Virus record (IMG/VR): IMGVR_UViG_3300010938_000951
Location: 186,001 to 250,000 of that record
Strand: one strand, 5' to 3'
Length of the DNA stretch: 64,000 bases
In this document: piece after piece, positions 46,283 to 62,100 of the stretch
Position numbering within the stretch: position 1 is the stretch's first letter
Layout: every line of letters starts with the position of its first letter
Notes under the pieces: generated by a model
Databases searched by the model: none
Told to the model about the DNA's origin: nothing
Seen by the model: only the letters and a program-made list of their open reading frames with translations
Made by a program: the position numbers and the translations under genes

Positions 46283-47053
46283 ATGAAACTCCGTGAACTG
46301 CTTCAAGAAATGAAGAGAGTCCAGGTAAATATAGGCGCATCTACGCCGTATATTTGCGGAGGTACGCCCAGAGATAAATACATGGGCAAATTAGAAAATA
46401 TTGCAGACATAGATATGACTACTGGAGATAAAACTGTAGACTATCTATCTCAAGAATTTTATTTAACATTACGTAAAAGGTATAACGTTACTAGAAAAAC
46501 TATGGATGATGGACATAGTACGATTTTCATTGGCAGTTTGAAAATTGATTTCTCTTCAAATTTTATTGTACCAAATATTGATCAAGAGCTGGCAAAATTA
46601 GGAATTACTAAACCAACAGATATGCAACGCGAAATGTTTAGTCGTGATTTTACTTGCAACTCATTATTGCTTACTACAGATTTAAAACAAGTTTTAGACC
46701 CAACCAAAAGAGGATTCAAAGATATTAAAGATAAGAAAATACGTACTTGTTTATCACCAGAAATTACATTAACATCTAATAGAAATAGGGTGGTAAGGGC
46801 TATTTATTTAGCTTGTAAATTGGATTTCGATATAGACGATTCAATTATAGATTTTGTGCGCCAACATCCAGATTCTGTAAAAATCTCAACTGAGAAATCT
46901 ATGAATGATAAGTTGAATGAAGCGTTCTCTAGAAATCCAGAGAAGGCTGCAGCACTTATTACACAAATGAATCTCTGGAGCTATATTCCAATTACAGAAA
47001 AAGTTTATCCATATTATATAAAACAAATTAAAGGTAAAACTAATGTCGGTTAA
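46283..47053 (+). CDS. class II CCA/poly(A)-type nucleotidyltransferase (head-neck domains) with variant templating motif
   Basis: GGTPRD, DID, SRDFT.N and DP..G..D; SNRNR in place of EDxxR. Confidence 0.88.
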   Translation: MKLRELLQEMKRVQVNIGASTPYICGGTPRDKYMGKLENIADIDMTTGDKTVDYLSQEFYLTLRKRYNVTRKTMDDGHSTIFIGSLKIDFSSNFIVPNIDQELAKLGITKPTDMQREMFSRDFTCNSLLLTTDLKQVLDPTKRGFKDIKDKKIRTCLSPEITLTSNRNRVVRAIYLACKLDFDIDDSIIDFVRQHPDSVKISTEKSMNDKLNEAFSRNPEKAAALITQMNLWSYIPITEKVYPYYIKQIKGKTNVG

Positions 47054-47795
47054 TAAGCAAGCCTATTTTCAGGGTGGTGGCGGTGTAAATGAGCCAAAAC
47101 CAAAGAAGAAGAAATATAAATCTGATCCTGCTATTGTAGTTCAGCCAAGGTTCAAAGAGCCGTTTTATCGCAATTACGATTTATACAATGTTCCGGGCGA
47201 GCACGGCCCAGGCGCCGGTTGGCACGACATGAAAAAGTATAAATCGGTTTCAGAATTTCTAAAAGCCAAAAGAAAGAAGCTGAAGGACAAGTACAAAGCC
47301 GACGACTCTTGGATTTTGGATGATAATTCAAAAACGAAGAAAAATCCAAATATTGAAGCTCGTGCCGCCGTTTTTGAGGAAATTATTAAAAACGCTATCG
47401 ATTTTCCAATTGATGATCAGATTGATGAGGGGTTGGGCGGACCATTTGAGACAGATACTGTTAATGATAATCCAGTAGGATATGCTAATTTAACAGGCGG
47501 AAAATTAGATGAATATTTGCCAAAAAATGATTTTGAAGGTAAATTACCAACTAATTTAGATTTTGGTAGGGACTATGTTGAGAGGCAAGAGCCTGGTCGT
47601 GGGCTATTAGATGATATTATTGAAAAACTTTTCAATAAGTATTTACCAGCATCGGAAACAGATTTATTTGGATTACCAGATGGTATTGAACCAAATTCTG
47701 ATTTAGATGCAGAACAGACAATGGATGTAGAAGAGCCATTTACTGGAACATCCGATATTGGCACTGATATGTATAAGGATAATTGGATCGTCTAA
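47043..47795 (+). CDS. hypothetical protein, largely disordered, sharing an N-terminal peptide with the scaffold repeats
   Basis: NKQAYFQGGGGVNEP is identical to a 59151-protein segment. Confidence 0.8.
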   Translation: MSVNKQAYFQGGGGVNEPKPKKKKYKSDPAIVVQPRFKEPFYRNYDLYNVPGEHGPGAGWHDMKKYKSVSEFLKAKRKKLKDKYKADDSWILDDNSKTKKNPNIEARAAVFEEIIKNAIDFPIDDQIDEGLGGPFETDTVNDNPVGYANLTGGKLDEYLPKNDFEGKLPTNLDFGRDYVERQEPGRGLLDDIIEKLFNKYLPASETDLFGLPDGIEPNSDLDAEQTMDVEEPFTGTSDIGTDMYKDNWIV

Positions 47796-47810
47796 AACCA
47801 ATCATTATCA

Positions 47811-47839
47811 TTGCATACAACCGCATATTATCATATAAA
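47811..47839 (+). promoter_or_regulatory. sigma70-like TTGCAT-17-TATAAA overlapping motif-B variant GCATATT-ATCA-TAT (47823-47836)
   Basis: Intergenic, upstream of the GAGGT SD and ATG 47863. Confidence 0.5.
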
Positions 47840-47862
47840 GAAAGCACTCTAGAGGTACCTAA

Positions 47863-48939
47863 ATGACTTTACAATCGACAGCACAACAGCTATACGTCAT
47901 AGACCCGGTTTCCCCAGCGTCACAACTACCAGCTCATGACGAACATTCAGTTATAGCTATACCTCCACACCTACACCATGGTGGCGAGGAAGAGCTTATG
48001 AGTGGGCCTATTGAAGTGTCCGAGCCGGGGGAAATTGAAATTCTTATAGAAGACATTCCAGGCGCTCCTCCAGGAACTAAGGATCCAGAAATTGAAGTTG
48101 TTGATGAATCATTGCAAGTTGAAGATAACAATGAAGCAAAAAAGGAAACCGAAAAAGACGAAAAGGGTAGTAAATGGAATTGGTCAAAGCACGGTCCACA
48201 TGGCTTTGTAGCTTGGGTCAAGGAAAGACTTGATTCTGTTCCAAAACACTCAGGATACGATTCTGCCGGACTAGAGCGCGCCATGGCTTACATGGAAAAA
48301 TTAGACAATGAAATTTCTAAGGCCATGAGAATGGATCTTGATTCTGAATTAGACGCCAATCAGGTCGAGAAGATTCGCTCTCAATTAGATGAAGGTTTAG
48401 CTCGTTTGCGTGATCGTCTTGATAAGGTTAAAGAATCCAAAAAGTCTTCTCGTAAAAAGAAGAAGACCGCTGCCGATTTGAAGTCTCAAATTGACAAAGT
48501 GCTTGAAAAATATGCAGATGAAGATTTACAAGCATGGGTAGAGGATACTGGTGTTCCAGGCGAAGAATGGAGCGCAGAAAAAGTAATTGTACAACTCGCT
48601 AATGAAGGCTTTGAACCTGGTTTTGAAGGCACTAACATCGTTAAAGAGGCTCAAAAAATTACTGGTGTGCAAGGTGTTTATGTAACCGTTCCTCTTTTAA
48701 TCTCTAGGGTGGCTCGTGTTTGCATTAATGGTACTGTATCTGCGGGACATGATATTGAAGATTTATACAGACGCCAAGTAGCTAAGTATAAATTAGATGA
48801 TCGTGAGCAGGCTGAAGTAAGACAATTACTATGGGATATGGGCTATCCACTTCGTGAAGACCGTGGATTCTTCCCAGAAGATGACCTAGAAGTATACGAT
48901 ACTGATAACATGGATTGGGCAGCTAACTACAGGGCATAA
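47863..48939 (+). CDS. hypothetical (putative head) protein
   Basis: 358 aa; STAQ, KKTAA and VKEAQ borders. Confidence 0.8.
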   Translation: MTLQSTAQQLYVIDPVSPASQLPAHDEHSVIAIPPHLHHGGEEELMSGPIEVSEPGEIEILIEDIPGAPPGTKDPEIEVVDESLQVEDNNEAKKETEKDEKGSKWNWSKHGPHGFVAWVKERLDSVPKHSGYDSAGLERAMAYMEKLDNEISKAMRMDLDSELDANQVEKIRSQLDEGLARLRDRLDKVKESKKSSRKKKKTAADLKSQIDKVLEKYADEDLQAWVEDTGVPGEEWSAEKVIVQLANEGFEPGFEGTNIVKEAQKITGVQGVYVTVPLLISRVARVCINGTVSAGHDIEDLYRRQVAKYKLDDREQAEVRQLLWDMGYPLREDRGFFPEDDLEVYDTDNMDWAANYRA

Positions 48940-48940
48940 T

Positions 48941-49573
48941 ATGGTTAAAAATTCTAGACACCAAGGTGTCATTAGTAGACAATCTGATGAATCTTATAGC
49001 GAAGATCATTGGTTGAAGGAGTTTGAAAACAAACTTCAAAAAACCAGCGTACAGCCTCGTGGTCATAGCCTATTTGATCAGATTAGCTCCATCATGAATA
49101 CTAAATCCAAATATCCATCAGTACAAGCTGCAGTTGATGATATGATGCAGCGCAGTGGATTAACAGCTTATTTGGATAATGTTAAAACATCTACAGAAGA
49201 AACTTCAGGCAAACCAAAGAAAACCGCTCAATTAAAAGAAGACTCTAAAATTCCTGATGTAATTAAAGCTAAACCAAGCATCAAACACACTCTAGAGAAT
49301 ATTATCAGGGAAACAAGAGGAAATATTCCAGTTCCAGCTATAATTAGTCGTTTGCGAGCCCTTCATGCGGCTGATATTAGTGATGAAAGTGCTTGGGAAG
49401 ATGAGAAACTCATTCGTTTAGTTAGCAGTTGTAATCTACAAGCCAAGAAGGACAATCCTGGAAACTATGATCATTTTGATGATCTAGGTAGAGGAGACCA
49501 TTCTACTGCTGATTCTGATATTGATGCGTCCAATACTGATGCATTTAACGCTTTAATGCCTGCAAAAATTTAA
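48941..49573 (+). CDS. hypothetical (putative head) protein
   Basis: 210 aa; KKTAQ. Confidence 0.75.
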   Translation: MVKNSRHQGVISRQSDESYSEDHWLKEFENKLQKTSVQPRGHSLFDQISSIMNTKSKYPSVQAAVDDMMQRSGLTAYLDNVKTSTEETSGKPKKTAQLKEDSKIPDVIKAKPSIKHTLENIIRETRGNIPVPAIISRLRALHAADISDESAWEDEKLIRLVSSCNLQAKKDNPGNYDHFDDLGRGDHSTADSDIDASNTDAFNALMPAKI

Positions 49574-49587
49574 GTGCTTTGCACTTA
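49571..49587. repeat. palindrome TAAGTGC-ttt-GCACTTA containing both convergent stop codons
   Basis: TAA 49571-73 (+ gene) mirrors TAA 49585-87 (- gene). Confidence 0.85.
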
Positions 49588-50091
49588 CCCAGCCTGTTTT
49601 TGAGTATTTCTAGTGGGCCTAATTACTATTTCAGGCTTATCATGTGGACAATATCCAAAAAATCCTTTAGCACAGTTGCAATTATAGCATAATAATTGAT
49701 ATTCTTCTTTAGGAAAGTTATTTTTAATTAGCCAACGGTATAATTTACCACCAGATTTCTTACCATTTTGTCGTCGATCTTCTGCACCATCATTATTTAT
49801 GTGATCAATAGTTAGAAATTCTAAGGTAGTTTCCCCACAACAAGTGCATTTGCCACCATAGGCTTCTATAATTTTTTGTTTAACACTAAGATCATAAACT
49901 CTTTGTTGTTCTCTTATTATTTCTTTTCTATTTGTATATCTTCTTTTGCTATATTCTTTACAACAAAAGATACACATATATTTAGCCTGTTTAATATCGG
50001 AAGGTCTAGTATTATCTTTAGTTAGGCTTTTGAAGCATACAGTGCAGCTTTTGCCTTCAAAACTATATTGTCGTTTTTTCTTATCTGTCAT
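49585..50091 (-). CDS. His-Me finger (HNH-like) endonuclease with N-terminal zinc finger, inverted
   Basis: CTVC and CIFC; YGGKCTCCGE..LTIDHINNDG..YQLLCYNCNCAK. Confidence 0.88.
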   Translation of the reverse strand: MTDKKKRQYSFEGKSCTVCFKSLTKDNTRPSDIKQAKYMCIFCCKEYSKRRYTNRKEIIREQQRVYDLSVKQKIIEAYGGKCTCCGETTLEFLTIDHINNDGAEDRRQNGKKSGGKLYRWLIKNNFPKEEYQLLCYNCNCAKGFFGYCPHDKPEIVIRPTRNTQKQAG

Positions 50092-50117
50092 GGGTATATT
50101 TCAGAATATATCCATGA
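50088..50117. promoter_or_regulatory. palindrome TCATGGGTATATT-tcag-AATATATCCATGA containing both divergent start codons; candidate bidirectional promoter
   Basis: 13-bp arms with one mismatch; G(A/G)TATAT lies 14 nt before each ATG. Confidence 0.7.
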
Positions 50118-51991
50118 ACAATGATACTTATAAAGAAATGTTTTATAGGTTTAAGGATAAGCTAGCTAATCTTGATCCGGTAGAATTTTGCCAGAAACAT
50201 TTAACACTTGAAGGAGAGCCATTTTCTCTCGTAGGCAACGGGTATAAACCTTTCAGCGATATCTATAGATACATTGGAATTAAGGCATTAGAAAAAGATT
50301 CTAAACCAGTTATTCTAGTAAAGGGACGTCAGGTAGGTGCTACTACCATGGCAAGCGCCCTTGAAATGTATTTCATGGGCTCTGGTTTATTTGGAGATGG
50401 ATTCCGTCCACCAATTCGTGTTATTCATGCTTTTCCTCAATTAGAATTAGCGGCAGCTTATTCAAAAACTAAACTCAATCAAATGATTTCTCAGGCTAAA
50501 ATCCCTGAGGGAGCCGTAGAAAATAAAGCATCTCGTCCAAAGTCTTTCATGCAGCAATTGCTTGATACTACGACTGCTACTAATGACTCTTTACATTTTA
50601 AACAATTCTTGGGCGGAAATCACTTGTGGATTGAATCTACTGGTGTAGATGCCGACAGAATCATGGGTCGTACCGCTGATATCATATTTTTTGACGAGGT
50701 ACAGAAAACTACCAGTGTAGCTATTGGAAACGCGCTTAAAATTTTAACCAACGCCAAATATGGTAAGCCAACTAAAGGCGTACAAGTATTTTTTGGAACG
50801 CCACGTCGTAAGGGATCTGATTATCATAAGATGTGGCAATCATCATCTCAGCAGTATTATTATCTTGGATGCGAAAAATGCGAAAAGCATTTTCCTCTTT
50901 ATACTCCAGGTTCTGATGATTGGGAAAAAGTTTGGATTCACGGTATGATTGTTAAATGTACCCATTGTGGTCATGAACAAGATAAACTACAAGCACAAGA
51001 ACGTGGTAAGTGGGTTCCGCTAAAAGATCCAAACGATCCAGATTGCGCAATGGTTGGGTTTCATATTAACCAACTTTACATGCCAAAATTTACACGAGAA
51101 GATATTGAAAAAGAAAAGCCTGGTAAACATCCGATCAACACAGAGCGCGTTTTTCAAAATGAGGTTCTTGGAGAGTTTTATCAAGGTGATGCTACCCCAA
51201 TGTCTCCAGAAGACATTCGTGTAAATTGTGCCGATTTCGAAAGAAAATTTAGCCCTCGTATTTTGCCAGCTAAAGGTGTAACGCAACAATTAACTGTACT
51301 TGGAATCGACTACGGTGCACGTTCAGATTTGGAACAACTAGCAGACCCAGAAAGAGTAAGACCAGCAGGACAATCTTATAGTACAGCAGTTGTATTACAA
51401 ACAAAAGGCCCAAGTATACTATCAATTGAGTTTGCTACCAAATTTAAACGAAATGACATAGAAAGCAAAAAAGGTATAATTGATCAGTTGATGAGACAGT
51501 ACAGTATACAATTGGCTATTGGAGACATTGGTTATTCTAATGACTTCTCATCTCTATTGCATAATACATACGGAGATAGATACTTAGTGTCTCGTGCTCA
51601 TAATAAAGTTAATGAGCATGTTAAGTTCAATCATGAAGCTTTTCCAAAAGAAATTGTTTTTGAAAGAGATTTTTATATTAGTGAACTTTACGATCAAATG
51701 AAAAAAGGATTAGTTAGGTTTCCATATGGCGATTATGAGAAAATCGCATGGCTTATTGATCATTGTTGTAGTATGGAATTAAAACCATCTATTTCTAAAT
51801 ATGGAGATCATACAGTACATTATGTTAAAGGCGGCACTCCAAACGATGGATTTATGGCATTATTAAATGCTTATTTGGCCTATAAATTCCTGGTAAGTCG
51901 AGGGTTTACAAATAATAATCCAACATTACACAATACTAAAAACTTGACGAAACCTATGGTAATTACTGGCTATGTACCTAGGAAGTTCTAA
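50114..51991 (+). CDS. terL: terminase large subunit
   Basis: VKGRQVGATT, FFDEVQ, FGTP, CEKC/CTHC, GIDYG, DIGY and NDG..ALLNAY. The start is ATG 50114, not 49946. Confidence 0.92.
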   Translation: MNNDTYKEMFYRFKDKLANLDPVEFCQKHLTLEGEPFSLVGNGYKPFSDIYRYIGIKALEKDSKPVILVKGRQVGATTMASALEMYFMGSGLFGDGFRPPIRVIHAFPQLELAAAYSKTKLNQMISQAKIPEGAVENKASRPKSFMQQLLDTTTATNDSLHFKQFLGGNHLWIESTGVDADRIMGRTADIIFFDEVQKTTSVAIGNALKILTNAKYGKPTKGVQVFFGTPRRKGSDYHKMWQSSSQQYYYLGCEKCEKHFPLYTPGSDDWEKVWIHGMIVKCTHCGHEQDKLQAQERGKWVPLKDPNDPDCAMVGFHINQLYMPKFTREDIEKEKPGKHPINTERVFQNEVLGEFYQGDATPMSPEDIRVNCADFERKFSPRILPAKGVTQQLTVLGIDYGARSDLEQLADPERVRPAGQSYSTAVVLQTKGPSILSIEFATKFKRNDIESKKGIIDQLMRQYSIQLAIGDIGYSNDFSSLLHNTYGDRYLVSRAHNKVNEHVKFNHEAFPKEIVFERDFYISELYDQMKKGLVRFPYGDYEKIAWLIDHCCSMELKPSISKYGDHTVHYVKGGTPNDGFMALLNAYLAYKFLVSRGFTNNNPTLHNTKNLTKPMVITGYVPRKF

Positions 51992-52015
51992 AGCGCCTAA
52001 ATACTGAGCTTTACT

Positions 52016-52022
52016 GATATAT
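52016..52022 (+). promoter_or_regulatory. motif A TGATATAT
   Basis: Intergenic between TerL and portal. Confidence 0.4.
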
Positions 52023-52068
52023 CATATTTTGTGTATTCTAGTAGAGGGTATAGTGGAACAGAGGTTAC

Positions 52069-53943
52069 ATGGCTGGTATTAAAAAATCGGGATTAGGAGA
52101 TCATCCGTCCTTTTCAGCAAAGTTCTTACAGGGCAGATCCACCACCCCTCAAGTAAGTGCTATTATGGCTCAGGGTGTTTCTGGAGAAAGAAGAGTTATT
52201 CTTTCAGACGAAGTAGACCAAGGATATTTTAGAGACGGTTCTGGGCCAAGTTTAAATAAAATGGCACTAAATTCTCCCACAAGTGCTTCAAATGTAGTCT
52301 CTTCAGTGGGTTTCAAGAAAAATGCTCAAGTAGTTTCTTCAGTTGGAGGAATGTTTCGTGGTATTCATGGAGATTCCGTTAAGCAAACTCCTGAAGTATA
52401 TTCCCCTCTTTGGCTTAATAGTAATCTAAACCTTCCCAGGGACCGTGCAACAATCAATGCATGGTGTCGTAGCTTTTTTGCTTTAAATCCATTTGTACAC
52501 AATGCTATTAGTTTACATAGCACTTATCCTATTAGCAAGCTTTCTATTAAATGTCCAAACAAAGATATTGAAAAATTCTTTGATGATATGATTGAAGAAA
52601 TTGATTTAATGAATATTTGCGTACAAATTGCCCAAGAATATTGGCTTTTAGGAGAAGCATTTGTTTATGCAGAATTAGATGAAGGTAAAGGCAAGTGGAG
52701 TCGCCTACACATTCAGAATCCAGATTTTATGCTTGTCAAACGTACGGTTGTAGCAAGCGAACCAATCATCATGCTTCGTCCTGATGAAAACCTCAAAAAA
52801 ATTATTTTCTCAAATCGTCCAACTGATATTGAACAACGTAAACAATTAAATCAACACATCATTGATTCTGTTAGACGTGGTGAAAATATTCCACTAGACA
52901 ATTTCCACGTATCACATTTGGCTCGTCGTATTAGTCCATACGAAATCAGAGGCACAGGATTACCTGTTTGTATTTTCCGTCAGTTAATGTTATTCGACAA
53001 ATTGCGTGAATCTAAATATGCACAGTCTGATAATATGATCAATCCATTGACTTTGGTTAAGATTGGTTCGGCTGATTATAAGCCAACTTTTGCTGACCTA
53101 GAAGCTTGGAGAAGTGTATTTGAAGAAGCGCAGTACGATAAAGACTTTAAGATATTTACCCATGAAGGAGTAGCGGTTGAAAGAGTAGGTTGGGGACAGG
53201 GAATCTATGATATCTCTGGAGATATTACTCAGCTACTTAAAGAAATTTTTATTGGGTTATTCGTACCACCTGTTATGATGGATGGTGGCGATACTACCAC
53301 TTATGCTAATGCTGGTGTAGCTTTGGACGTTCTTCGTCAGAGGTACATGCAGTTCCGTAACATGATGTCCATTTGGTTAAAGAATAAGATTTTTGCTCCA
53401 ATCTCCAAAATTCAAGGGTTTTATGACTACTCTGGTGGAGAGAAACAACTTATTGTTCCTGAAATTGATTGGAATCACATGTCATTATTTGATGCTGGAG
53501 ATTATATCAATAGTTTAATGACATTATCTCAAGGACAAGCGGATCAAAAGAGAGTATCTATTCATACTCTTTATCGTTCATTGGGTCTTGAGTACGAAGA
53601 TGAAGTACGTAAAATGCGTAAAGAAAATATTCAAAATGCAATTGCTAAGAAAGAAATTGCCGCGTTAGATCAAATGGATCTAAATGCTCTTCGTGCTTTG
53701 GATGATGAGGATGAAATTCCAGAACCAAAACAACCGGGTGCTGGACAAGAACAACCAGTACCAGGAGAGATGCCAGGAGGAGCACCGGGTGGATTACCAG
53801 ATTTGGGTCTACCAGGCGGTGGCCCTCCACCACCTCCACCACCAGGTGGCGGTGGACCTCCACCACCACCTCCTCCGCCACCAGAAGGCGGTCCACCAGG
53901 CGGTGGACCTCCAGCAGGCGGAGCACCTCCACCAGCTCCATAA
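52069..53943 (+). CDS. portal protein with Pro/Gly-rich C-terminal tail
   Basis: Follows TerL; WCRSFF..NP.V.NAI, HLARR.SPYE.RG..LP and PLTLVKIG portal-type motifs; GAGG SD. Confidence 0.85.
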   Translation: MAGIKKSGLGDHPSFSAKFLQGRSTTPQVSAIMAQGVSGERRVILSDEVDQGYFRDGSGPSLNKMALNSPTSASNVVSSVGFKKNAQVVSSVGGMFRGIHGDSVKQTPEVYSPLWLNSNLNLPRDRATINAWCRSFFALNPFVHNAISLHSTYPISKLSIKCPNKDIEKFFDDMIEEIDLMNICVQIAQEYWLLGEAFVYAELDEGKGKWSRLHIQNPDFMLVKRTVVASEPIIMLRPDENLKKIIFSNRPTDIEQRKQLNQHIIDSVRRGENIPLDNFHVSHLARRISPYEIRGTGLPVCIFRQLMLFDKLRESKYAQSDNMINPLTLVKIGSADYKPTFADLEAWRSVFEEAQYDKDFKIFTHEGVAVERVGWGQGIYDISGDITQLLKEIFIGLFVPPVMMDGGDTTTYANAGVALDVLRQRYMQFRNMMSIWLKNKIFAPISKIQGFYDYSGGEKQLIVPEIDWNHMSLFDAGDYINSLMTLSQGQADQKRVSIHTLYRSLGLEYEDEVRKMRKENIQNAIAKKEIAALDQMDLNALRALDDEDEIPEPKQPGAGQEQPVPGEMPGGAPGGLPDLGLPGGGPPPPPPPGGGGPPPPPPPPPEGGPPGGGPPAGGAPPPAP

Positions 53944-53962
53944 TCTTTTAATTCAATTGAAT

Positions 53963-54020
53963 AACCCTCTCTTGTGAATAATCCAGCATTGTTTTAGCTA
54001 TTACGCACAAGTAGAGGGTT
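53963..54020 (+). promoter_or_regulatory. long hairpin occluding the SD of the 54025 gene and enclosing motif B (GAATAAT-CCAG-CAT, 53976-53989)
   Basis: AACCCTCT-CTTGTG pairs with CACAAG-t-AGAGGGTT (14 bp, one bulge). Confidence 0.65.
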
Positions 54021-54024
54021 TTCC

Positions 54025-55281
54025 ATGGATAAATTAGCTCAAAGTAAAAGACAAACGGGTCGTGGCTTTTTCAATAAATTGAGAGAGCAAGTTAATAGAC
54101 CAGGTGCCATTTTAGAAGGTATTTTCAAACCAGAGCTAGATAGAGTTATGAAATCTCTAGGCGAGCTAGATGACCGTGTTCGTTCTGAAATTACTGGTAC
54201 TAAAATTGGTAATGCTGAAGAGCCAGCTATTAAAATGTCTGGCAAAGACCTATTAAAGGAAGCTCGTAAAGCTTTTAATCGTCGAGAATATATGAGTGGA
54301 GTTTCTGATTTGGCTATGTTCCACAAGAAACTTCAAAATATGGCAAATGATATCGACAAGTTTTTTGTTGATGTTAATAAAATCCATCATAAATTTTTAT
54401 TCCAAGGAGTTGACGAAGAAAAGTTAAAGAGACTTCGTGAACATATGGAGCCAAAAGCGGCTTCTGTAATTGCAGACCAATTACTTAAAGAAGCTGGCCT
54501 TATTGATGAGATCGTTAATATTGTTTCTAGACGTGGTCGTGGTTTAGCTGCTTGGGAAAAGAAGTATCCAAAGGAAACTAAAGCATTACGTGAAGGTGGT
54601 TCTCGTTTGATTGATCAGGCAGAAGCTACTTTAGAGAGTGTTATTTCTGCTTTGAAAGAAATGGCTACAGCTCGCGCCATTCGCAGACCAGATGATTATA
54701 TGGATGCAGCCGCTAAAATTAAAGCAGCTTTTAATAAGTTTGATTCCGGCGATAAAGGATTTAGATCGTTTTATCAAAATGCAGTAATGCCTTGGATGAA
54801 AATTAAAGATGAAATTGAAAAGCAACAACAAGCTCAACAGCCAACCGTACCAACTACCACCGGGCCAAAACCAGGACAAGTAGAATTGGGTGGGCAACCT
54901 CCAACACCACCAATGCCACCGCCTCCTCCAACCACTCCAGGCGGAACACCTGCTCCTGTGCCGGCACAATCTCCTCCAGCAACACCTCCATCCAAGCCAG
55001 TTTTACAATTAATGCCAGAAGAGGATGAAGCCGCTCCAGATACTGAAAAGACGCCACCACCTCCACCAGAACCTCCTGTTAAAGTTCGTGTTGCGCCTTC
55101 AGTTAATCCTCCAAAGGTTAGAGTTGCTCATTCTAGTTTTTATAAATCATTAGAGGCAATGAGTAATGAAGATCCTCGTATTGTCTGCGCATATGTTACC
55201 AAGTATGCTAAATCTATTCAAGGAGATGATCCAGAAACAGCTATTAAATTGTTTTCTATTGTTAAGCAAATAAAGGGCTAA
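54025..55281 (+). CDS. hypothetical helical protein with Pro-rich linker (putative internal head protein)
   Basis: MDKLAQ, LKEAG and RVAHS borders. Confidence 0.8.
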   Translation: MDKLAQSKRQTGRGFFNKLREQVNRPGAILEGIFKPELDRVMKSLGELDDRVRSEITGTKIGNAEEPAIKMSGKDLLKEARKAFNRREYMSGVSDLAMFHKKLQNMANDIDKFFVDVNKIHHKFLFQGVDEEKLKRLREHMEPKAASVIADQLLKEAGLIDEIVNIVSRRGRGLAAWEKKYPKETKALREGGSRLIDQAEATLESVISALKEMATARAIRRPDDYMDAAAKIKAAFNKFDSGDKGFRSFYQNAVMPWMKIKDEIEKQQQAQQPTVPTTTGPKPGQVELGGQPPTPPMPPPPPTTPGGTPAPVPAQSPPATPPSKPVLQLMPEEDEAAPDTEKTPPPPPEPPVKVRVAPSVNPPKVRVAHSSFYKSLEAMSNEDPRIVCAYVTKYAKSIQGDDPETAIKLFSIVKQIKG

Positions 55282-55285
55282 AAAT

Positions 55286-56305
55286 ATGGGAAAACAGGTG
55301 CCAAAGACAAATACACCAGTCTCAGACGCACAAATGGCACAGGCAATTGTAAATGTCTGGCAGCGTTTGTTTGGCACAGCTCCGTCTAAAGAGCAGGTGT
55401 ATATGATTATGGCACAAAACGCTATTGAAACTGGTCGTGATAGAAAATCTATGCACAATTATAATGTTGGCAATATTATAGTTGGAACTACCGATCATGA
55501 TTATTTTCTTGGCGGAGATTGGATGTATGCCGACAAAGCGCAAACCGTAAAAAAACCAATCACTCAAAAATTTCGCGCCTACAATACCCTAGAGGAAGGT
55601 GTATCTGATTATCTTAATTTGTTAAGTAAAAGTAGAAGATATGCAACAGCTTGGCAGCATATTTTACATCCAGATATTCGTGCTTATTCTAAAGCACTTC
55701 ATGATGCTGGATATTATGGAGCCAAGGAAGAAGATTACACAAAAGGACTGCTCGGACAATTTAAAAGTTTCGATAAAGGTAATTCTTACTCGGTTGCTAT
55801 GTCTGGTAGCCGTAATCAACCATCTACAATGGTTGCTAAACAGGAAACGCAAGATATGGGCGAGTTAAATCAAGTTATACAAAATCTAATGAATGAGTTT
55901 AGATTATCTGCCACCAATTATAATTTGAAAAAATTATATAAAGCAGCTTTACCTACTCATAATATACTGATTACAATCAAAGCTAGCGATCGTGTTAGTG
56001 CAATTGAATTCTCTCAAGTTCTTTGTGCCGCTTTGGATGAAGATTTACTTTCTACTTCATATCCTCATACTGATGGCAATGAAGTAGAAGTAGAATGTTC
56101 CATTTCTGGCCCTGAGCAAGAATGTTTTGCGGCCGTTAAACAAATGACAGAAGCTGTTGCTGAAACATTTAAAGATGCTACAACGAAAATTGGTGGAATT
56201 ACTGTTAAAACACAGTTAATTATGAATAAAAAATCATCTTATCAACCCATCAGTCCTAGAAGCGCTGATACTAACCACAGGAATTTCCTGCTTAAATTCA
56301 TTTGA
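55286..56305 (+). CDS. GH73 glucosaminidase-like peptidoglycan hydrolase fused to an unknown C-terminal domain
   Basis: AQNAIETG, YNVGNI, FRAY.TLEEG..DY..LL...RY and AL..AGYY. Confidence 0.82.
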   Translation: MGKQVPKTNTPVSDAQMAQAIVNVWQRLFGTAPSKEQVYMIMAQNAIETGRDRKSMHNYNVGNIIVGTTDHDYFLGGDWMYADKAQTVKKPITQKFRAYNTLEEGVSDYLNLLSKSRRYATAWQHILHPDIRAYSKALHDAGYYGAKEEDYTKGLLGQFKSFDKGNSYSVAMSGSRNQPSTMVAKQETQDMGELNQVIQNLMNEFRLSATNYNLKKLYKAALPTHNILITIKASDRVSAIEFSQVLCAALDEDLLSTSYPHTDGNEVEVECSISGPEQECFAAVKQMTEAVAETFKDATTKIGGITVKTQLIMNKKSSYQPISPRSADTNHRNFLLKFI

Positions 56306-56314
56306 GGAAACACA

Positions 56315-56710
56315 ATGCCAACTGAACAACAAATTTTGGATGCGGTGCAGAATCATCAAGGTTCAGGAAAGACTTTTGCTGAATTTCTAGCTGAAGTATT
56401 CAAGGACAAGTTCATTGAGATTTACGTTGGTGACTCTTATGAAGACGTCAGTACAGAACAAATTTCTACTACTTATCCTGCCGTATTTTGTGGAAAAGTA
56501 ATAGCTGCTTATCGAGAGTGTTTAATTATTAATTGCGCTTTTGTGACTAGGAATAAAACTCTAGCTCTTGGAAATATAATGTTTATTAATGAAAGAGCAA
56601 TAAGAGCACTTAATGAAATTGATGGTAATGGCACATTAGAAGAAATGATGCTTAGAAGTAAAGAGTCTTTAGAGATTAGAGAAAGATTTATACTTAACAA
56701 AACGAAGTGA
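56315..56710 (+). CDS. hypothetical beta-rich protein
   Basis: GAGGA SD; 131 aa. Confidence 0.7.
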   Translation: MPTEQQILDAVQNHQGSGKTFAEFLAEVFKDKFIEIYVGDSYEDVSTEQISTTYPAVFCGKVIAAYRECLIINCAFVTRNKTLALGNIMFINERAIRALNEIDGNGTLEEMMLRSKESLEIRERFILNKTK

Positions 56711-56713
56711 GCA

Positions 56714-57466
56714 ATGAGAAACCTAGATGATATTTTACAGCTTGCTAGCACTTATGAAGAACAGTGCATACAAGATTTGGTAAAAGTGGCGAAGATTCGT
56801 CAATTACCAGATGGTAAGTATCGTGTGCTTTCTCAAAAGGGCAAAGATTTAGGTACATATAAATCTAGAAAAGCTGCCGAAAAGCGTCTTCGTCAGGTAG
56901 AGTTTTTTAAACACTTAGACAAGTCTAAAGCTGATGATCAGGGCAATGCAATTGCTCCAATTGATTTAACTAGTGCTGATGAATTTAGTTACTCTGCTCT
57001 TATGAGAAAACTACGTCAAGAAGCCTCTCCAGAACAAGTTAGAGTATTTCTTACTATTTTTAAATCACAATTTGATAAAGCTGTCAAAAGTAAAGTTCAT
57101 AAACCAGAGAGAATAGCTTTACAAAATGCTATTATCAAGTTTCATAAGATACATCCAGTAAAACTTGATAAAAAGATGGTTAAATGTGCTGCTGTGGCTG
57201 AATTAGGAGATCCTGACAGTGTTGGTAGATATTTAGCTGATATTGTTAAATTCATGTTAGCTAGATTGCCACCTCAAAAGCGCCCAAGAGCAGCACAAGT
57301 ATTGAAACAAAAATTCACTGTAATGAGCGAGAATGCAATTGCAGGTAAAAACATGCCGCCAGCCGCTGTGTATGGTCAGGCAATTACTTTCGTTAAACAC
57401 GTTCTTTTCAACCAAGATGCCACATACATTAGAAATGTGTTGAATAGTTTGTCGAGGAACCTATGA
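56714..57466 (+). CDS. hypothetical protein with a basic domain of phage head-gene type
   Basis: KIRQLPDGKYRVLS.KGK.LGTY.S...A.KRLRQVEFFKH. Confidence 0.75.
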   Translation: MRNLDDILQLASTYEEQCIQDLVKVAKIRQLPDGKYRVLSQKGKDLGTYKSRKAAEKRLRQVEFFKHLDKSKADDQGNAIAPIDLTSADEFSYSALMRKLRQEASPEQVRVFLTIFKSQFDKAVKSKVHKPERIALQNAIIKFHKIHPVKLDKKMVKCAAVAELGDPDSVGRYLADIVKFMLARLPPQKRPRAAQVLKQKFTVMSENAIAGKNMPPAAVYGQAITFVKHVLFNQDATYIRNVLNSLSRNL

Positions 57467-58233
57467 TCAAAAGATTTCGCCCAGTAATTCCTGGGGTTTT
57501 GTATCGTGGGTCAGCTCCAACTCCACAAGATGTGTTAGAGTTAAAAGATAAACTAGGAATCAAAAAAATTGTCAGTTTAGATAAAAAAGCTGGTGAAGCT
57601 ATTTCTCGTGCTTGTAAAATGTTGGGTATTGATCAGGTAAAATTATATATTGAACATGATAGAAAAACACTTTACGATTTCCTGTCTCAAAATATGAGAA
57701 AATTATTTTTAGAAGACGGTCCTACATTTGTACATTGTCAAGAAGGAAAAGATCGAACAGGATTAGCTTGCGCAATGGTAAAGTGCAAATTTTTAGGAAT
57801 GAATCCAGAAAAAGCAATACAAGAAGCAAAATCACTAGGGTTTGGTATAGGTTTACCTCTTAATATAACGAATACTTACGAAAAGATAATACGTCATTGT
57901 AAGCCAGAGAAAGACACAAATAGTGCTGATATAGTGTCAAATGAAAGAGAATATAAGGGTGATAATCGCGACTCTTTTCTAGACGAAGCACATCAAGGAT
58001 CTTTTGCTCCTCACCTAGATCATACGCGCCAAAACCCAATGGACGCCGTCTACACTTATATAAATGATCAGTCGCCTACTCGTCAAAATTATCCAGATAC
58101 ATCATTATTTCGGTATGATCCTGAGAAGGGTGATGTAATTCCTAATGTTGGCGAATTTGATAATGATGCTGGACAAAGGGGATTCGGTCCAACAGAAAAC
58201 TACAATGGTTTCTTTTCAGAGGTAGGGCACTGA
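57463..58233 (+). CDS. Cys-dependent (dual-specificity/tyrosine) phosphatase with acidic tail
   Basis: LYRGSAP and HCQEGKDRTG (CX5R). Confidence 0.9.
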   Translation: MIKRFRPVIPGVLYRGSAPTPQDVLELKDKLGIKKIVSLDKKAGEAISRACKMLGIDQVKLYIEHDRKTLYDFLSQNMRKLFLEDGPTFVHCQEGKDRTGLACAMVKCKFLGMNPEKAIQEAKSLGFGIGLPLNITNTYEKIIRHCKPEKDTNSADIVSNEREYKGDNRDSFLDEAHQGSFAPHLDHTRQNPMDAVYTYINDQSPTRQNYPDTSLFRYDPEKGDVIPNVGEFDNDAGQRGFGPTENYNGFFSEVGH

Positions 58234-58896
58234 ATGATTAAAAAGTCTTATTCTGTACAAATGAGCTATGACGTGACTGATAGTGAAAGACATCAGGCAG
58301 AGAGAGCGCTTGTGTATTTTAAGGCCGCTGAAAAGTATTTGACACAAGCATCTGATCATTTGAACATTATGAAGACCCCTTTTAAAGATAATCCTGATAT
58401 GACACCAGATGATGTAATGAAAGCTCGTGCTGTTATTAGGCGTTTTCGTGATAAAGCCATTGAAAATTTTGATAGATTTAAGAAGGTCGCATTTGATTGT
58501 GTAAATTTAATGCAAACATTTTCTAGTGATACACAAACACTCAAATTGATGAAATCATTCATTTCATCAGTTGATGATTTAGAAGTTAGTGTTAATCAAT
58601 TTGCTGATTTATTTAATGATTTACAATCAAAGGATTTTGTCAAAGATGTAGTTTCTGCTATTGAATCTATTCAAAAACAGTGTGATGAGATTGATGAAAT
58701 CATTGATGAAAGAATAAAATCTCATATTCAAACAAATATCTTAGCTACTAGTTGGGTAGATTCAATTAGTAATGACTTGCAAATGAAAATAGAGAAGAAA
58801 ACCCCATTAATTGTGGATCTTTATAATCAAAGGCAAGAACAATTAAATGAAGCGGTGGAGGAAAGAAGCACAGGTTCAAGCCAAGAAAAATGGTAA
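58234..58896 (+). CDS. hypothetical helical-bundle protein
   Basis: 220 aa, all-helical pattern. Confidence 0.75.
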   Translation: MIKKSYSVQMSYDVTDSERHQAERALVYFKAAEKYLTQASDHLNIMKTPFKDNPDMTPDDVMKARAVIRRFRDKAIENFDRFKKVAFDCVNLMQTFSSDTQTLKLMKSFISSVDDLEVSVNQFADLFNDLQSKDFVKDVVSAIESIQKQCDEIDEIIDERIKSHIQTNILATSWVDSISNDLQMKIEKKTPLIVDLYNQRQEQLNEAVEERSTGSSQEKW

Positions 58897-58946
58897 TATC
58901 TCTGTATAATAGATAAAGTTTTCGGTTTTAAACCGGAAATTTGTAG

Positions 58947-58960
58947 CAATATTACATTAT
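58947..58960 (+). promoter_or_regulatory. motif B candidate promoter CAATATT-ACAT-TAT
   Basis: Upstream of the 58990 ORF and the protease gene. Confidence 0.55.
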
Positions 58961-58989
58961 ACCTGTGTGGTCTCCCATTTGGAGAGTTT

Positions 58990-59145
58990 ATGTTTATTAA
59001 ACACGGTGATGGAAAAATACTAAACGTTGTTGATAGCGAAGAATTAACTGAAGAACAAAAGAACGCTGTCAAGAAGGTTTCTAAAGAGTTCGTCAAGCAA
59101 TCTGACGAGTCAACTGATTCTTCTAAAAAGAAGTCAGGGAGCTAA
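58990..59145 (+). CDS. 51-aa small protein not in the ORF track (MFIKHGDGKILNVVDSEELTEEQKNAVKKVSKEFVKQSDESTDSSKKKSGS)
   Basis: GGAGAG SD; ends 5 nt before the protease ATG. Confidence 0.7.
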   Translation: MFIKHGDGKILNVVDSEELTEEQKNAVKKVSKEFVKQSDESTDSSKKKSGS

Positions 59146-59150
59146 TATAC

Positions 59151-62100
59151 ATGACCATTATTAAATTAGGCGAAGCTCACGAGATTAAATTGGAAAGCAT
59201 GGAATCATGTCTTCCAGAATTGAGTGCTGATGTCTTAGAGAACTTTAGGAAATTTGCTGCTAATCTAAAGAAGATTGCACCTAAAGCAGAAGACTTTCTT
59301 TATTTTTCTGCTGTCATGATGCATGCCGCAGAAGCATCTGCATTAAACGAAGATGGTACACCAAAATTAACACTTAAAGGTGAGCCAGTACAAGTTGGAT
59401 GGGATACTAGCGGAGGCACATGGAAGTGGATTAGCAATGATCCAAGTATTCGACCATATAAAAATTCTAATGGCGATATATTTCCAGAAGCCGAATTAAC
59501 CAAAGCTTATAAAAAATGGAAGCACAAGCCTCTTTGCGTGGATCATAAATCAAGTTCAGTAGACCACGTTAGAGGCTTTATTGTTGATACTTATTATGAT
59601 CGCAATCTCAAGAGAGTAATTGCATTATGTGCCTTAGATAAGGCCGGATTCCCTCAATTAGCCAGACAAGTAGCTACTGGCGTTTCAACTTGCGTATCAA
59701 TGGGTACAGCAGTTGGTAGGGCAATTTGCTACGATTGTGGTAGAGTCGCTCGTGCAGAGCAGGACTTCTGCAATCATATGAAAAACAAGACTTGCTACGG
59801 CGAAATCAACGTAGACCTTAATCCAATTGAGTTGTCTATCGTTGTAAATGGTGCTGATCCTAGAGCCAACATCAAAAACATCATCGCCGCAGCTAACACC
59901 ATGAATACGTACCTTGAAAATCGTGCTAAGGAACTAGAAAAACTTGCCGATCTCAAGTTTCATGCTACTATTGGTGTAGATGACCCACAAGGTCATGAGG
60001 GTGGCGGTTCTGCAACTTTCAATGTTCAAGCAAATGACATTGACAAGTTCAAAACTGATTTAGATGAAGCATTTAGGAAAGTTCAAGAGTTTAAAAACGT
60101 AAAAATTTCTGAACTAGATACTAATTCTTCAGCATCTAATCAATCGTCGGGTTCGATTGCCATGGATGAAGGCGCACCCACGGATTCTGGATTGGCTCTC
60201 CAAACTCCGCAAACTAACAGGTTTGCATCCGCAGATGTAGAGGCGGAATCATTGGCTGAGCTTCAGCAAGTTACTGCATCAATTGAAGCAACGTTAAGTC
60301 AAATGAAAAAGAGCTTGGATAAGTTAGCTAAAACTACTTCTACAAAAACACAAGAGGAAAATATGTCTGGATCAAAAGAAATTAATAAGCAAGCTTATTT
60401 CCAGGGCGGCGGTGGCGTAAATGAGCCAACTCCAGGTCAAGTTAAGTATCCAAAAGACGGACTCAATGAGCAGCTTCGTGAGAACGAGGATAAGCACATG
60501 GTGGGTCAGCCTCCTTTCCCTGAGGTAGGTCCAGTCGATGGTATGCACCCTTCACCAGCTTCGGCTGATCCTTCTGGGGAGTTAGAGCGTAAGAAGATGC
60601 TCGCTCGTGCAGAAGCAGAAGAGCGTGCTCTTAAGCGTAATGCCATTGTAAATATGGTTAAGGATACACTAAAGAACAAAGAAGCCTACTGGCAAGGTGG
60701 TGGCGGTGTTAACGAGCCAACTCCAGGTAAGGCAAAGTATCCAAAGGATAAACTAAACGAAGAACTTCGTGATTACGAAGATAAGCAGATGGTTGGTCAA
60801 CCACCATTCCCTGGCGTTGGTCCAGTTGATGGTTTGCATCCATCTCCATCTTCAGCAGATCCAAAAGACGAATTAAAGCGCAAGCAAATGCTCGCACGCG
60901 CACAACTACGTGCAAGATTCGTTAAGGCTGCAAATAATGATGGAACTCAAAACAAAGCAAAGAGCGCTTGGGAAGTATTCCTAGGTGATAAGCTATTGTT
61001 AACTGCTTCTGTTGATGAACTATCCGGAGGCAATACTGCAGTTCTATATGATTCAATTGCAACCAAAGAATTTGGTACTAAGTTAATTGAAAAAGTTAAG
61101 GTACAAGGCGCTGATGCTGTATCTAAACTAATCAAGAAGGCACAAGGCGCTCCTCCAGCTCCTCCTCCAGGTGACCCATCTAGCGCAGCTCCTCCAGCCG
61201 ATCCAGGCGCAGGCGCTCCAGATGCTGGTCCTCCAGCAGAAGATACGGGTGGTTCTGGCGATCCAAAGCAAACTGCCGTCGAACTTTCTGAAAAAGTAAG
61301 AGACCTAAGCTCTGATCTAGTCGAAGCTGTTCGTGCTTTAACTGGCGAACAAGCTGAGATGGGTGGTCCAGAAGCTGGTGGTGTTGGTGGTCCTGCTGGT
61401 GGTCCAATGGCCGCTGATGACCAAGATGCTCGTAAGAAGAAGGATGACAAAGAATCTACCGCTTCTGATAGCTTCAGTGCTAATACTCTTAACACTTTAA
61501 GAAAAGAACTTAATGGCGCACTAACTCATGCCATGAAAGAATCTATTGCGGAACTTGCTGAGCACAAGCAAGAACTAGATATGATTGCTGGTATGTATGA
61601 CAAGGGTGCTGTAACTCCATCTAACCAGGAGTTTGTGGGTACTATCGTAGAAGATGCATTAAATGAAGCTAAAACTGCCGTAGCAGATGGTTTCAAACTA
61701 ATGACAGCTTTTGTTAAGTATGCTCGTGGTACTAAGGCCATTGTCAAGCGTGCTGAAATTGAATCAGAATTGCAAGCACTAGCCGAAGGAGATACCGAAA
61801 TGAGCGACAAAGAAGATAGTCACTCCGCAGACGGCGGTGACTTGATGGGACTAATTAACGACACCAATGCAGATTTGGATGCCGTTCAAGAGATGATGGG
61901 TGATGACCAAAGCCACGAAGGCAGTTTAGATGAACTTCTAGACGAACCAGTAGGCGAAGAATCACTAGGAGGTCTTGAAGGAGAGGATCTACTAACAGGT
62001 TTGGCTGACGATAACGACCTTACTTTCGAACAAGGTGAGAAAGTTCCACCAGAGTTGGCCGGAAAGAAGTTAACTATGGCATCTTATGATGATAGAGCTG

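What the first reader, a model, noticed from the sequence alone, without database searches (positions are those of the whole stretch)
47043..60902. Identical 15-aa peptide in two genes 13 kb apart, kept by purely synonymous divergence
Seen: NKQAYFQGGGGVNEP at 47052-47096 and 60384-60428 differs at six third positions with no amino-acid change, and the match extends to P....KY..D. A third copy (NKEAYWQGGGGVNEP) opens scaffold repeat 2 at 60675. Both KQAY copies lie a few residues after a Met with a start context. Inference: a conserved post-cleavage N-terminal peptide (Y[FW]QGGGGVNEP) that binds a common site in the prohead, letting the 47043 protein join the scaffold core.
Basis: partly seen in the sequence, partly recalled or inferred. 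Interest (0 to 1): 0.7.

Follow-up and report, generated by a model that had tools for sequence, protein, structure and literature searches.

The report
Shared address peptide on huge-phage scaffold
A 26-residue peptide is shared by the capsid scaffold protein and a small neighbouring protein across a clade of uncultivated huge phages related to Bacillus phage G. It most likely acts as a common assembly or processing tag for the procapsid, but no experiment supports this yet.

Summary
NKQAYFQGGGGVNEP occurs at 47052-47096 and 60384-60428, and all six nucleotide differences are synonymous. A third copy lies at 60675.

The shared element is a discrete 26-residue motif, NK.AYFQGGGGVNEPTPG..KY..D. 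Homology stops at its edges.

It occurs in only two protein families among 1.84 billion representative proteins:
- the scaffold part of a 1231-aa prohead-protease/scaffold fusion (59151-62846);
- the N-terminus of a disordered 250-aa protein (47043-47795).

Both copies are probably N-terminal by translation, not by cleavage. Just upstream of the first scaffold motif, 51 of 54 relatives carry an in-frame ATG with a Shine-Dalgarno sequence, against 2 of 38 at the second motif. This implies a nested scaffold product, as in lambda C/Nu3 or Mu I/Z.

Synonymous sites are nearly saturated, so protein-level selection keeps the identity, not gene conversion.

The scaffold copy is the more widespread. 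Distant orthologues of the small protein lack the motif, and about a quarter carry it internally, behind a fused nucleotidyltransferase.

Best reading: a tag like the T4 capsid-targeting sequence, or a protease site. The partner is unknown, and structure and complex predictions were uninformative.

The parts
46283..47053 (+). 256-aa nucleotidyltransferase gene (PolyA_pol / tRNA nucleotidyltransferase head domain). Its stop codon overlaps the start of the 47043 gene. About a quarter of relatives have it fused in frame to the motif-bearing protein.
   Evidence: Pfam PF01743 E 4.1e-12 and phrog_2244. Fusions in 10 of 41 distinct relatives, 9 with the nucleotidyltransferase signature. The synteny is conserved.
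47031..47034 (+). Shine-Dalgarno-like AAGG, 8 nt upstream of ATG 47043.
   Evidence: Sequence read. Of 31 N-terminal-type relatives, 27 have ATG plus SD.
47043..47795 (+). 'Class B' gene: a 250-aa protein predicted to be disordered, with a basic N-half (pI 9.8) and an acidic C-half (pI 4.05). It has no Pfam or PHROG family.
   Evidence: 340 homologues, all unnamed. ESM Atlas model pLDDT 0.41.
47052..47129 (+). Motif copy in class B, residues 4-29: NKQAYFQGGGGVNEPKPKKKKYKSDP.
59151..62846 (+). 1231-aa ORF ('class A'): N-terminal prohead maturation protease domain, a poorly conserved linker (about aa 251-404), then a scaffold-like acidic C-terminal part.
   Evidence: phrog_18299 head maturation protease E 1e-11. 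35.7% identity to Bacillus phage G gp19. Conservation profile.
59151..59936 (+). Protease domain (aa 1-262). His132 and Ser183 are invariant, as is a CxxC...CxH cluster (C193, C196, C207, H209). All are shared with phage G gp19.
   Evidence: Alignments A3 and A5.
60354..60365 (+). Internal ribosome-binding site (GAGG at 60354-60357) and in-frame ATG (60363-60365, Met405).
   Evidence: Sequence read. ATG plus SD occurs upstream of the first motif in 51 of 54 distinct relatives, against 2 of 38 at the second motif. Other internal ATGs carry an SD at 11.6%.
60363..62846 (+). Inferred nested scaffold protein, aa 405-1231 (827 aa), beginning MSGSKEINKQAYFQGGGG.
   Evidence: Inference. Some gene callers in other contigs start the ORF at this point, for example P0205.
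60384..60461 (+). Motif copy 1 in the scaffold (aa 412-437): NKQAYFQGGGGVNEPTPGQVKYPKDG.
60384..60965 (+). Two tandem 97-aa scaffold repeat units (60384-60674 and 60675-60965). Each consists of the motif, a Pro/Gly-rich stretch (MVGQPPFP.VGPVDG.HPSP) and a basic helix.
60675..60752 (+). Motif copy 2 in the scaffold (aa 509-534): NKEAYWQGGGGVNEPTPGKAKYPKDK. It is internal and has no conserved start.

Best explanation
The element is a 26-residue short linear motif: K.[AGS][YF][FYW]Q[GN], a Gly-rich spacer of variable length, then [EN]P.TP..[KQ]Y..D. I propose it serves as a common assembly tag in the procapsid of phage-G-related huge phages.

The protease-scaffold gene probably makes two products. 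One is the full-length protease-scaffold fusion. The other is a nested scaffold started at Met405, and this places the motif 7-13 residues from the scaffold's N-terminus.

The small disordered protein encoded at 47043 carries the same tag at its own N-terminus. It would therefore be taken to the same site as the scaffold N-terminus and co-assembled into the procapsid core, as T4 internal proteins are through their capsid-targeting sequence.

The invariant Gln followed by Gly or Asn may also be the bond where the maturation protease releases the tagged proteins.

Shown: the motif, its boundaries, its restriction to two families, protein-level selection, and the conserved internal start signal.

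Inferred: that the nested product is made, that the small protein enters the procapsid, the identity of the docking site, and any cleavage.
For: 1. Homology between the two families is confined to the 26 residues. hhalign gives probability 98.9% and E 1.4e-17 for the motif, and 1.9% for the flanking tails.

2. A profile of the motif finds 202 representatives at E<=0.001 among 1.84 billion proteins. Every listed hit that I inspected belongs to one of the two families.

3. Every motif codon varies freely at synonymous sites across 110 distinct copies. Flanking positions that the search pattern did not impose are conserved: K at -5 in 100 of 110, Y at -2 in 107 of 110, and K-Y at +14/+15 in 95 of 110.

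4. There has been no recent gene conversion. Codon identity between the two genes is 0.505 within genomes against 0.408 between genomes for the VNEP form, and 0.433 against 0.412 for the TEEP form.

5. The internal start is conserved. ATG plus SD occurs in 51 of 54 first motifs, 2 of 38 second motifs, and 11.6% of other internal ATGs. Conservation along the protein resumes exactly at QEENMSGS, after a poorly conserved linker.

6. The motif starts 8-10 residues from Met1 in 83 of the 91 close class B homologues that have the exact motif.

7. The same three spacer variants occur in both families: GGGGVNEP, GTEEP and NG.G..NPNTPTP. The form in class B matches the form at the scaffold N-terminus in 17 of 19 genomes. 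TEEP is polyphyletic on the class B tree.

8. The context is a head-gene cluster: large terminase, portal, protease-scaffold, and a major capsid protein (MCP) 56% identical to phage G gp27.

9. There is a precedent. The T4 capsid-targeting sequences are N-terminal propeptides of about 10-20 aa, identical or similar between otherwise divergent internal proteins, that bind the prohead core and are cut off by gp21 (PMC7411985, PMC9026906).
Against: - No proteomic or structural data exist, because the clade is uncultivated. Phage G, the nearest cultured relative, has no detectable motif or class B homologue.
- The motif is internal in the second scaffold repeat and in 10 of 41 class B relatives, so N-terminal exposure is not required.
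- Eight more distant genomes keep class B without the motif.
- Two genomes mix spacer forms between the two genes, so co-variation is not strict.
- Class B is always linked, and sometimes fused, to a nucleotidyltransferase, once together with a J-domain. This could point to a role outside the capsid.
- AlphaFold2 leaves the motif disordered, and the complex prediction gave no verdict.
Confidence: 0.45

Rival explanations
1. The motif is only a maturation-protease recognition and cleavage site, cut after the invariant Gln (K-x-A-Y-F-Q | G/N). It cuts the scaffold into pieces, releases the protease-linker part, and trims class B or separates it from the fused nucleotidyltransferase. It has no targeting role.
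For: The conservation pattern looks like a protease site: strong from P6 to P1, a small P1' residue (G or N) in all three spacer forms, and a variable spacer after it. The motif sits at domain junctions: before each scaffold repeat, and between passenger domains and the class B body. A protease domain is encoded in the same ORF.
Against: Conservation continues about 20 residues beyond the putative scissile bond (EP.TP..KY..D), more than a cleavage site needs. Known phage prohead proteases cut after Glu (T4, SPN3US) or other residues, and a Gln specificity is not documented (PMC7411985; otherwise my own knowledge). Cleavage alone explains neither the 9-residue leader in class B nor the start codon placed just before the first scaffold copy. 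The protease-peptide prediction gave no verdict.
Confidence: 0.22
2. The motif is a self-association element. Copies bind each other, so class B co-polymerises with the scaffold N-termini without any third partner.
For: The same spacer form tends to occur in both genes of a genome, in 17 of 19 genomes. The scaffold carries the motif in tandem.
Against: Within one scaffold protein the two repeats often carry different spacer forms, for example TEEP with GGGGVNEP in G004 and TEEP with NGEG in G009. Two genomes mismatch between the genes. No structural prediction supports an ordered oligomer.
Confidence: 0.13
3. The motif has a function unrelated to the capsid. For example, a chaperone or another factor recognises it, and class B works with the adjacent nucleotidyltransferase.
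For: Synteny with the nucleotidyltransferase is constant, in-frame fusions recur, and one fusion includes a DnaJ J-domain. A DnaJ-like gene lies about 10 kb upstream in relatives.
Against: The other and more widespread carrier of the motif is the protease-linked scaffold, inside a head-gene cluster. The motif is absent from every other protein of the 267-kb record.
Confidence: 0.1
4. The identity is a leftover of a recent duplication or gene conversion, with no function of its own.
For: Within-genome codon identity is slightly higher than between-genome identity for the VNEP form: 0.505 against 0.408, permutation p 0.011.
Against: Synonymous sites are close to saturation while the peptide is invariant. 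The motif is kept across contigs whose flanks have diverged strongly. All 6 differences in the window are synonymous.
Confidence: 0.02

Closest known systems
T4 capsid-targeting sequence (CTS) of internal proteins IPI-III and Alt
   Same: Both are short N-terminal peptides, identical or nearly so between proteins that are otherwise unrelated. The T4 CTS sits on small basic proteins of the head core and is proposed to direct incorporation into the prohead core (PMC7411985, PMC9026906).
   Different: - This motif is 26 residues with a Gly-rich spacer, not about 10.
- It has no T4-type (L/I)-x-E at the end of a leader.
- The major scaffold itself also carries it, in tandem.
- It also works, or at least persists, at internal positions.
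- No incorporation or cleavage has been demonstrated.
Nested protease/scaffold genes: lambda C/Nu3, Mu I/Z, herpesvirus UL26/UL26.5
   Same: An N-terminal maturation protease and a C-terminal scaffold share one reading frame. An in-frame internal start preceded by a Shine-Dalgarno sequence would give a separate scaffold product with the same C-terminus. For Mu-like phages see PMC4378225. Lambda and herpesvirus are from my own knowledge.
   Different: - This ORF is far larger, at 1231 aa.
- The protease is of the phage G gp19 type and carries a Cys/His cluster.
- The internal start is placed so as to expose a conserved tag that a second gene also carries.
- Production of the nested product has not been shown.
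Encapsulin cargo-loading peptides
   Same: Short conserved terminal peptides on unrelated cargo proteins dock them to the interior of an HK97-fold shell (my own knowledge).
   Different: - This is a tailed-phage capsid with portal, scaffold and protease.
- There is no sequence resemblance.
- Binding to the MCP was not tested.
Long N-terminal propeptides of SPN3US / phiKZ-type ejection proteins
   Same: Giant-phage head proteins with propeptides, proposed to target them into the prohead and removed by the prohead protease (PMC7411985).
   Different: Those propeptides are 110-130 residues long and are not a shared short motif. Their cleavage motif resembles that of T4 gp21.

Membership tests
T4-type capsid-targeting sequence | A short peptide at the N-terminus, shared by head proteins that are otherwise unrelated | tested here: met
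   Homology is limited to 26 residues. The motif is N-terminal in 31 of 41 distinct class B relatives, and at the N-terminus of the inferred nested scaffold.
T4-type capsid-targeting sequence | Necessary and sufficient for incorporation into the prohead core | not testable with these tools
   This needs particles or reporter fusions. The clade has no cultured member.
T4-type capsid-targeting sequence | Removed by the prohead protease at its consensus site | tested here: inconclusive
   An invariant Q followed by G or N could be a cleavage site. No proteomics exist, and the protease-peptide prediction gave no verdict.
Nested protease-scaffold gene (lambda C/Nu3, Mu I/Z type) | N-terminal prohead maturation protease domain | tested here: met
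   phrog_18299 E 1e-11. 35.7% identity to phage G gp19, which is annotated as a head maturation protease (PMC12484599). His132 and Ser183 are invariant. There is no Pfam or PDB sequence match.
Nested protease-scaffold gene (lambda C/Nu3, Mu I/Z type) | In-frame internal start codon with a ribosome-binding site, conserved among relatives | tested here: met
   51 of 54 first motifs, 2 of 38 second motifs, and 11.6% of other internal ATGs. GAGG lies 5 nt before ATG 60363.
Nested protease-scaffold gene (lambda C/Nu3, Mu I/Z type) | The shorter product is actually made and acts as the scaffold | not testable with these tools
   This needs expression, ribosome profiling or toeprinting.
Prohead-protease cleavage site | A scissile bond used by the phage's own protease, shared by several head proteins | tested here: inconclusive
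   Only three copies exist in the genome. The MCP has no such motif. The prediction gave no verdict.
Encapsulin cargo-loading peptide | The peptide docks on the interior face of the HK97-fold shell protein | not tested

The most novel reading that the evidence does not exclude
The 26-residue motif is a portable, position-tolerant capsid-loading tag of megaphage procapsids, borrowed from the scaffold's own N-terminus. In this reading, whatever is fused to it is packed into the capsid and delivered with the DNA. That would include the class B protein and, in some lineages, a nucleotidyltransferase or a J-domain protein. It would make the motif a natural cargo-loading system for very large capsids.
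Probability: 0.15. Interest if true: 0.75.

Novelty: new variant of a known kind. Interest (0 to 1): 0.55.

Why it matters
Almost nothing is known about how capsids of the phage G size class are assembled. This clade has no cultured member.

A sharply defined peptide shared by the scaffold and a second protein, together with a conserved nested start, gives concrete hypotheses that recombinant proteins can test. These cover what nucleates or organises the scaffold core, where the protease cuts, and how accessory proteins are recruited.

If the peptide proves to be a targeting tag, it would be a tool for loading cargo into very large phage capsids. It would also help predict which unannotated huge-phage proteins are packaged.

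Tried and rejected
**Uninformative predictions**
- AlphaFold2 of residues 1-620 of the fusion, with a 21-row alignment, gave mean pLDDT 49.6. Both motif regions were under 50, so the model was too poor for a fold search.
- Complex prediction with protease domain 1-262 and scaffold residues 404-500 returned no verdict (score 0.00). This is not evidence either way.
I removed the phage G row and the class B fragment and did not resend them. The class B peptide itself was therefore never folded with a partner.

**Tested and rejected**
- I suspected that class B is a diverged whole scaffold repeat. hhalign on the tails gave probability 1.9%, so this is rejected.
- Gene conversion as the cause of the identity is rejected.

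**Searches that found nothing**
- Pfam capsid families PF05065 and PF07068 found no MCP. The 283-aa ORF downstream of the scaffold is not the MCP. The MCP was found with phage G gp27 as query.
- Phage G has no match to class B or to the scaffold repeats, and GenBank phages have none to class B.
- The pattern for the YFQNGQGKDNP variant had no hit in viral contigs.
- The ENA contig carrying that variant could not be searched further.
- A PDB sequence search with the protease profile found nothing.
- The ESM Atlas gave no lead for class B or for the 283-aa ORF.
Full report
**Observation**

- Gene 47043-47795 begins MSVNKQAYFQGGGGVNEPKPKKKKYKSDP.
- The 1231-aa ORF 59151-62846 contains NMSGSKEINKQAYFQGGGGVNEPTPGQVKYPKDG from 60360, and NKEAYWQGGGGVNEPTPGKAKYPKDK from 60675.

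The two 45-nt stretches differ at six third positions and nowhere else. Only 21% of possible single-base changes in these codons are synonymous, so six of six has a naive probability of about 1e-4. The degenerate pattern has 3 matches against 0.00 expected. There are no other copies in the 266,899-bp IMG/VR record that holds the window.

**What the genes are**

The large ORF has an N-terminal prohead maturation protease domain. It matches phrog_18299 at E 1e-11 and is 35.7% identical to Bacillus phage G gp19. That protein is annotated as the head maturation protease (PMC12484599).

His132 and Ser183 are invariant across relatives, including gp19, and so is a CxxC...CxH cluster.

After a poorly conserved linker (aa 251-404, mean identity 0.48) come two 97-aa tandem repeats and a long acidic, largely helical part. 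By position and composition this is the scaffold.

Large terminase and portal lie upstream. The major capsid protein (MCP) lies about 10 kb downstream, outside the window. It is 56% identical to phage G gp27 (E 2.6e-98) and matches phrog_2522 at 2.9e-81. The window therefore comes from an uncultivated relative of phage G.

The 47043 gene, called 'class B' here, encodes a 250-aa protein with no Pfam or PHROG match.
- Its N-half is basic (pI 9.8) and its C-half acidic (pI 4.05).
- Its ESM Atlas model has pLDDT 0.41.
- It has 340 unnamed homologues.
- It always follows a 256-aa nucleotidyltransferase gene (PF01743) and precedes two unknown ORFs, then terminase and portal.

**Extent and distribution of the motif**

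Profile-profile comparison of scaffold repeats with class B N-termini aligns exactly 26 residues, NK.AYFQGGGGVNEPTPG..KY..D (probability 98.9%, E 1.4e-17). With the motif removed, the tails are unrelated (probability 1.9%). The element is therefore a short linear motif, not a shared domain.

All lie either inside 1000-1600-aa protease-scaffold ORFs or in class B proteins.

A 36-column profile of the motif was searched against 1.84 billion representative proteins. It found 202 hits at E<=0.001 and 127 at E<=1e-10. All listed hits that I inspected belong to the same two families.

**Selection**

Across 110 distinct DNA copies every motif codon uses several synonymous codons. All four Gly codons are used at each of the four Gly positions.

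Flanking residues that the search pattern did not impose are also conserved: K at -5 in 100 of 110, Y at -2 in 107 of 110, and K-Y at +14/+15 in 95 of 110.

Codon identity between the class B copy and the first scaffold copy was measured at codons encoding the same residue.
- VNEP form: 0.505 within genomes, 0.408 between genomes.
- TEEP form: 0.433 within genomes, 0.412 between genomes.

The two copies have therefore diverged nearly to saturation at silent sites. Selection on the peptide maintains the identity, not recent gene conversion or a nucleic-acid signal.

**Internal start**

In 51 of 54 distinct relatives the first scaffold motif is preceded, 5-17 codons upstream of the Gln, by an in-frame ATG with AGGA, GAGG or GGAG at the right distance. 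The figure for the second motif, an otherwise identical sequence context, is 2 of 38. For other internal ATGs of these ORFs it is 11.6%.

The amino acids encoded over the Shine-Dalgarno sequence differ between lineages (QEEN, NEDKK, IEDTT, AKETQ, VKESE), yet the purine-rich core is kept. Protein conservation resumes at QEENMSGS after the variable linker.

In the window, GAGG lies 5 nt before ATG 60363.

I conclude that a nested scaffold (aa 405-1231) is very probably translated. Nested scaffold starts of this kind are known in Mu and Mu-like phages (PMC4378225), and in lambda C/Nu3 and herpesvirus UL26/UL26.5 (my own knowledge). The result is that the scaffold, like class B, starts M-x(6-12)-AYFQGGGG.

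**Variants and co-variation**

The spacer between YFQ and EP.TP comes in three forms: GGGGVNEP, GTEEP and NG.G..NPNTPTP. Each form occurs in both families.

The constant parts are K.[AGS][YF][FYW]Q[GN] and [EN]P.TP..[KQ]Y..D.

In 19 genomes where both genes could be read, the class B form matches the form in the first scaffold repeat in 17 (11 VNEP, 6 TEEP). The two exceptions are G029 and G030.

TEEP is polyphyletic on a quick class B tree, where starred branches force at least 4 changes. The association is therefore not a single inherited event. It is not strict, however, and the two repeats of one scaffold often differ in form.

**Limits on the N-terminal-tag idea**

In 10 of 41 distinct class B relatives the motif is internal. 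In nine it lies at about residue 257 of an in-frame fusion with a recognisable upstream nucleotidyltransferase, and only three of these keep an ATG plus Shine-Dalgarno sequence.

Other members carry different N-terminal passenger domains: a J-domain, DUF7919, or unknown ones.

Eight more divergent genomes keep a syntenic class B orthologue without the motif, while their scaffolds have it. One of them, G002 (447,763 bp), is estimated complete and another, G020 (409 kb), 96% complete.

The scaffold copy is therefore the general one. In class B the motif is an add-on, either acquired or repeatedly lost.

**Mechanism**

The best-supported reading is a shared assembly tag. The nearest precedent is the T4 capsid-targeting sequence. 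That is a short N-terminal propeptide, identical between IPII and IPIII and similar in IPI. It binds the prohead core and is removed by gp21 (PMC7411985, PMC9026906).

The invariant Gln followed by Gly or Asn, and the motif's position at domain junctions, make a cleavage site plausible, either as an additional role or as the only one. The 20 conserved residues after that bond argue for a binding role as well.

The partner could be MCP, portal, protease or the motif itself, and it remains unknown. AlphaFold2 left the motif disordered. The single complex prediction, protease domain with scaffold residues 404-500, gave no verdict.

**Novelty**

The concepts are already known: a targeting peptide, and a nested scaffold gene. 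New here are this motif, its presence on the scaffold itself, its sharp conservation in a megaphage clade, and the linked internal start.

Noticed in passing
window 46283-47053; loci L007, L019, L048, L058, L060, L088, L095, L112, L167 and L028: The nucleotidyltransferase gene upstream of class B overlaps its start by 11 nt. In about a quarter of relatives it is fused in frame, so the motif becomes the junction. In L028 the fusion also contains a DnaJ J-domain (792 aa in all).
   Followed up: partly
window 59727-59778 (P0003 residues 193-209): An invariant CxxC...CxH cluster (C193, C196, C207, H209) lies inside the prohead protease domain and is also present in phage G gp19. It looks like a zinc-binding insertion, which I have not seen described for prohead proteases.
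   Followed up: no
window 62873-63559, and P0003 around residues 756-766 (about 61416-61450): The 228-aa Lys/Asp/Ser-rich low-complexity protein just after the scaffold carries repeated DDNDARK.KK motifs, conserved in relatives. The scaffold has a similar DDQDARKKKDD. This may be a second short peptide shared between neighbouring head genes.
   Followed up: partly
L122:11031-12044 (G000:C1:259031-260044, outside the window): The major capsid protein lies about 10 kb downstream of the scaffold gene, not next to it, with about nine unannotated ORFs in between. It is 56% identical to phage G gp27, which places this metagenomic clade as kin of the only cultured megaphage.
   Followed up: yes
window 54025-55281: A 418-aa ORF between the portal and a glucosaminidase-domain protein contains a long Pro/Gly tract (PPPPPPPGGGGPPPPPPPPP).
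   Followed up: no
window 57463-58233: Homologues of this 256-aa ORF at the same syntenic position carry precomputed tyrosine-phosphatase Pfam hits (PF03162, PF13350). This would be a phosphatase-like gene inside the head module.
   Followed up: no
L124, L125, L127, L162, L194-L197: Class B orthologues in more divergent genomes lack the tag but keep the core F[FY].NYD...GPG.G.Y..M.KYKSV.DFLK.KRK. This basic core defines the family independently of the motif.
   Followed up: partly
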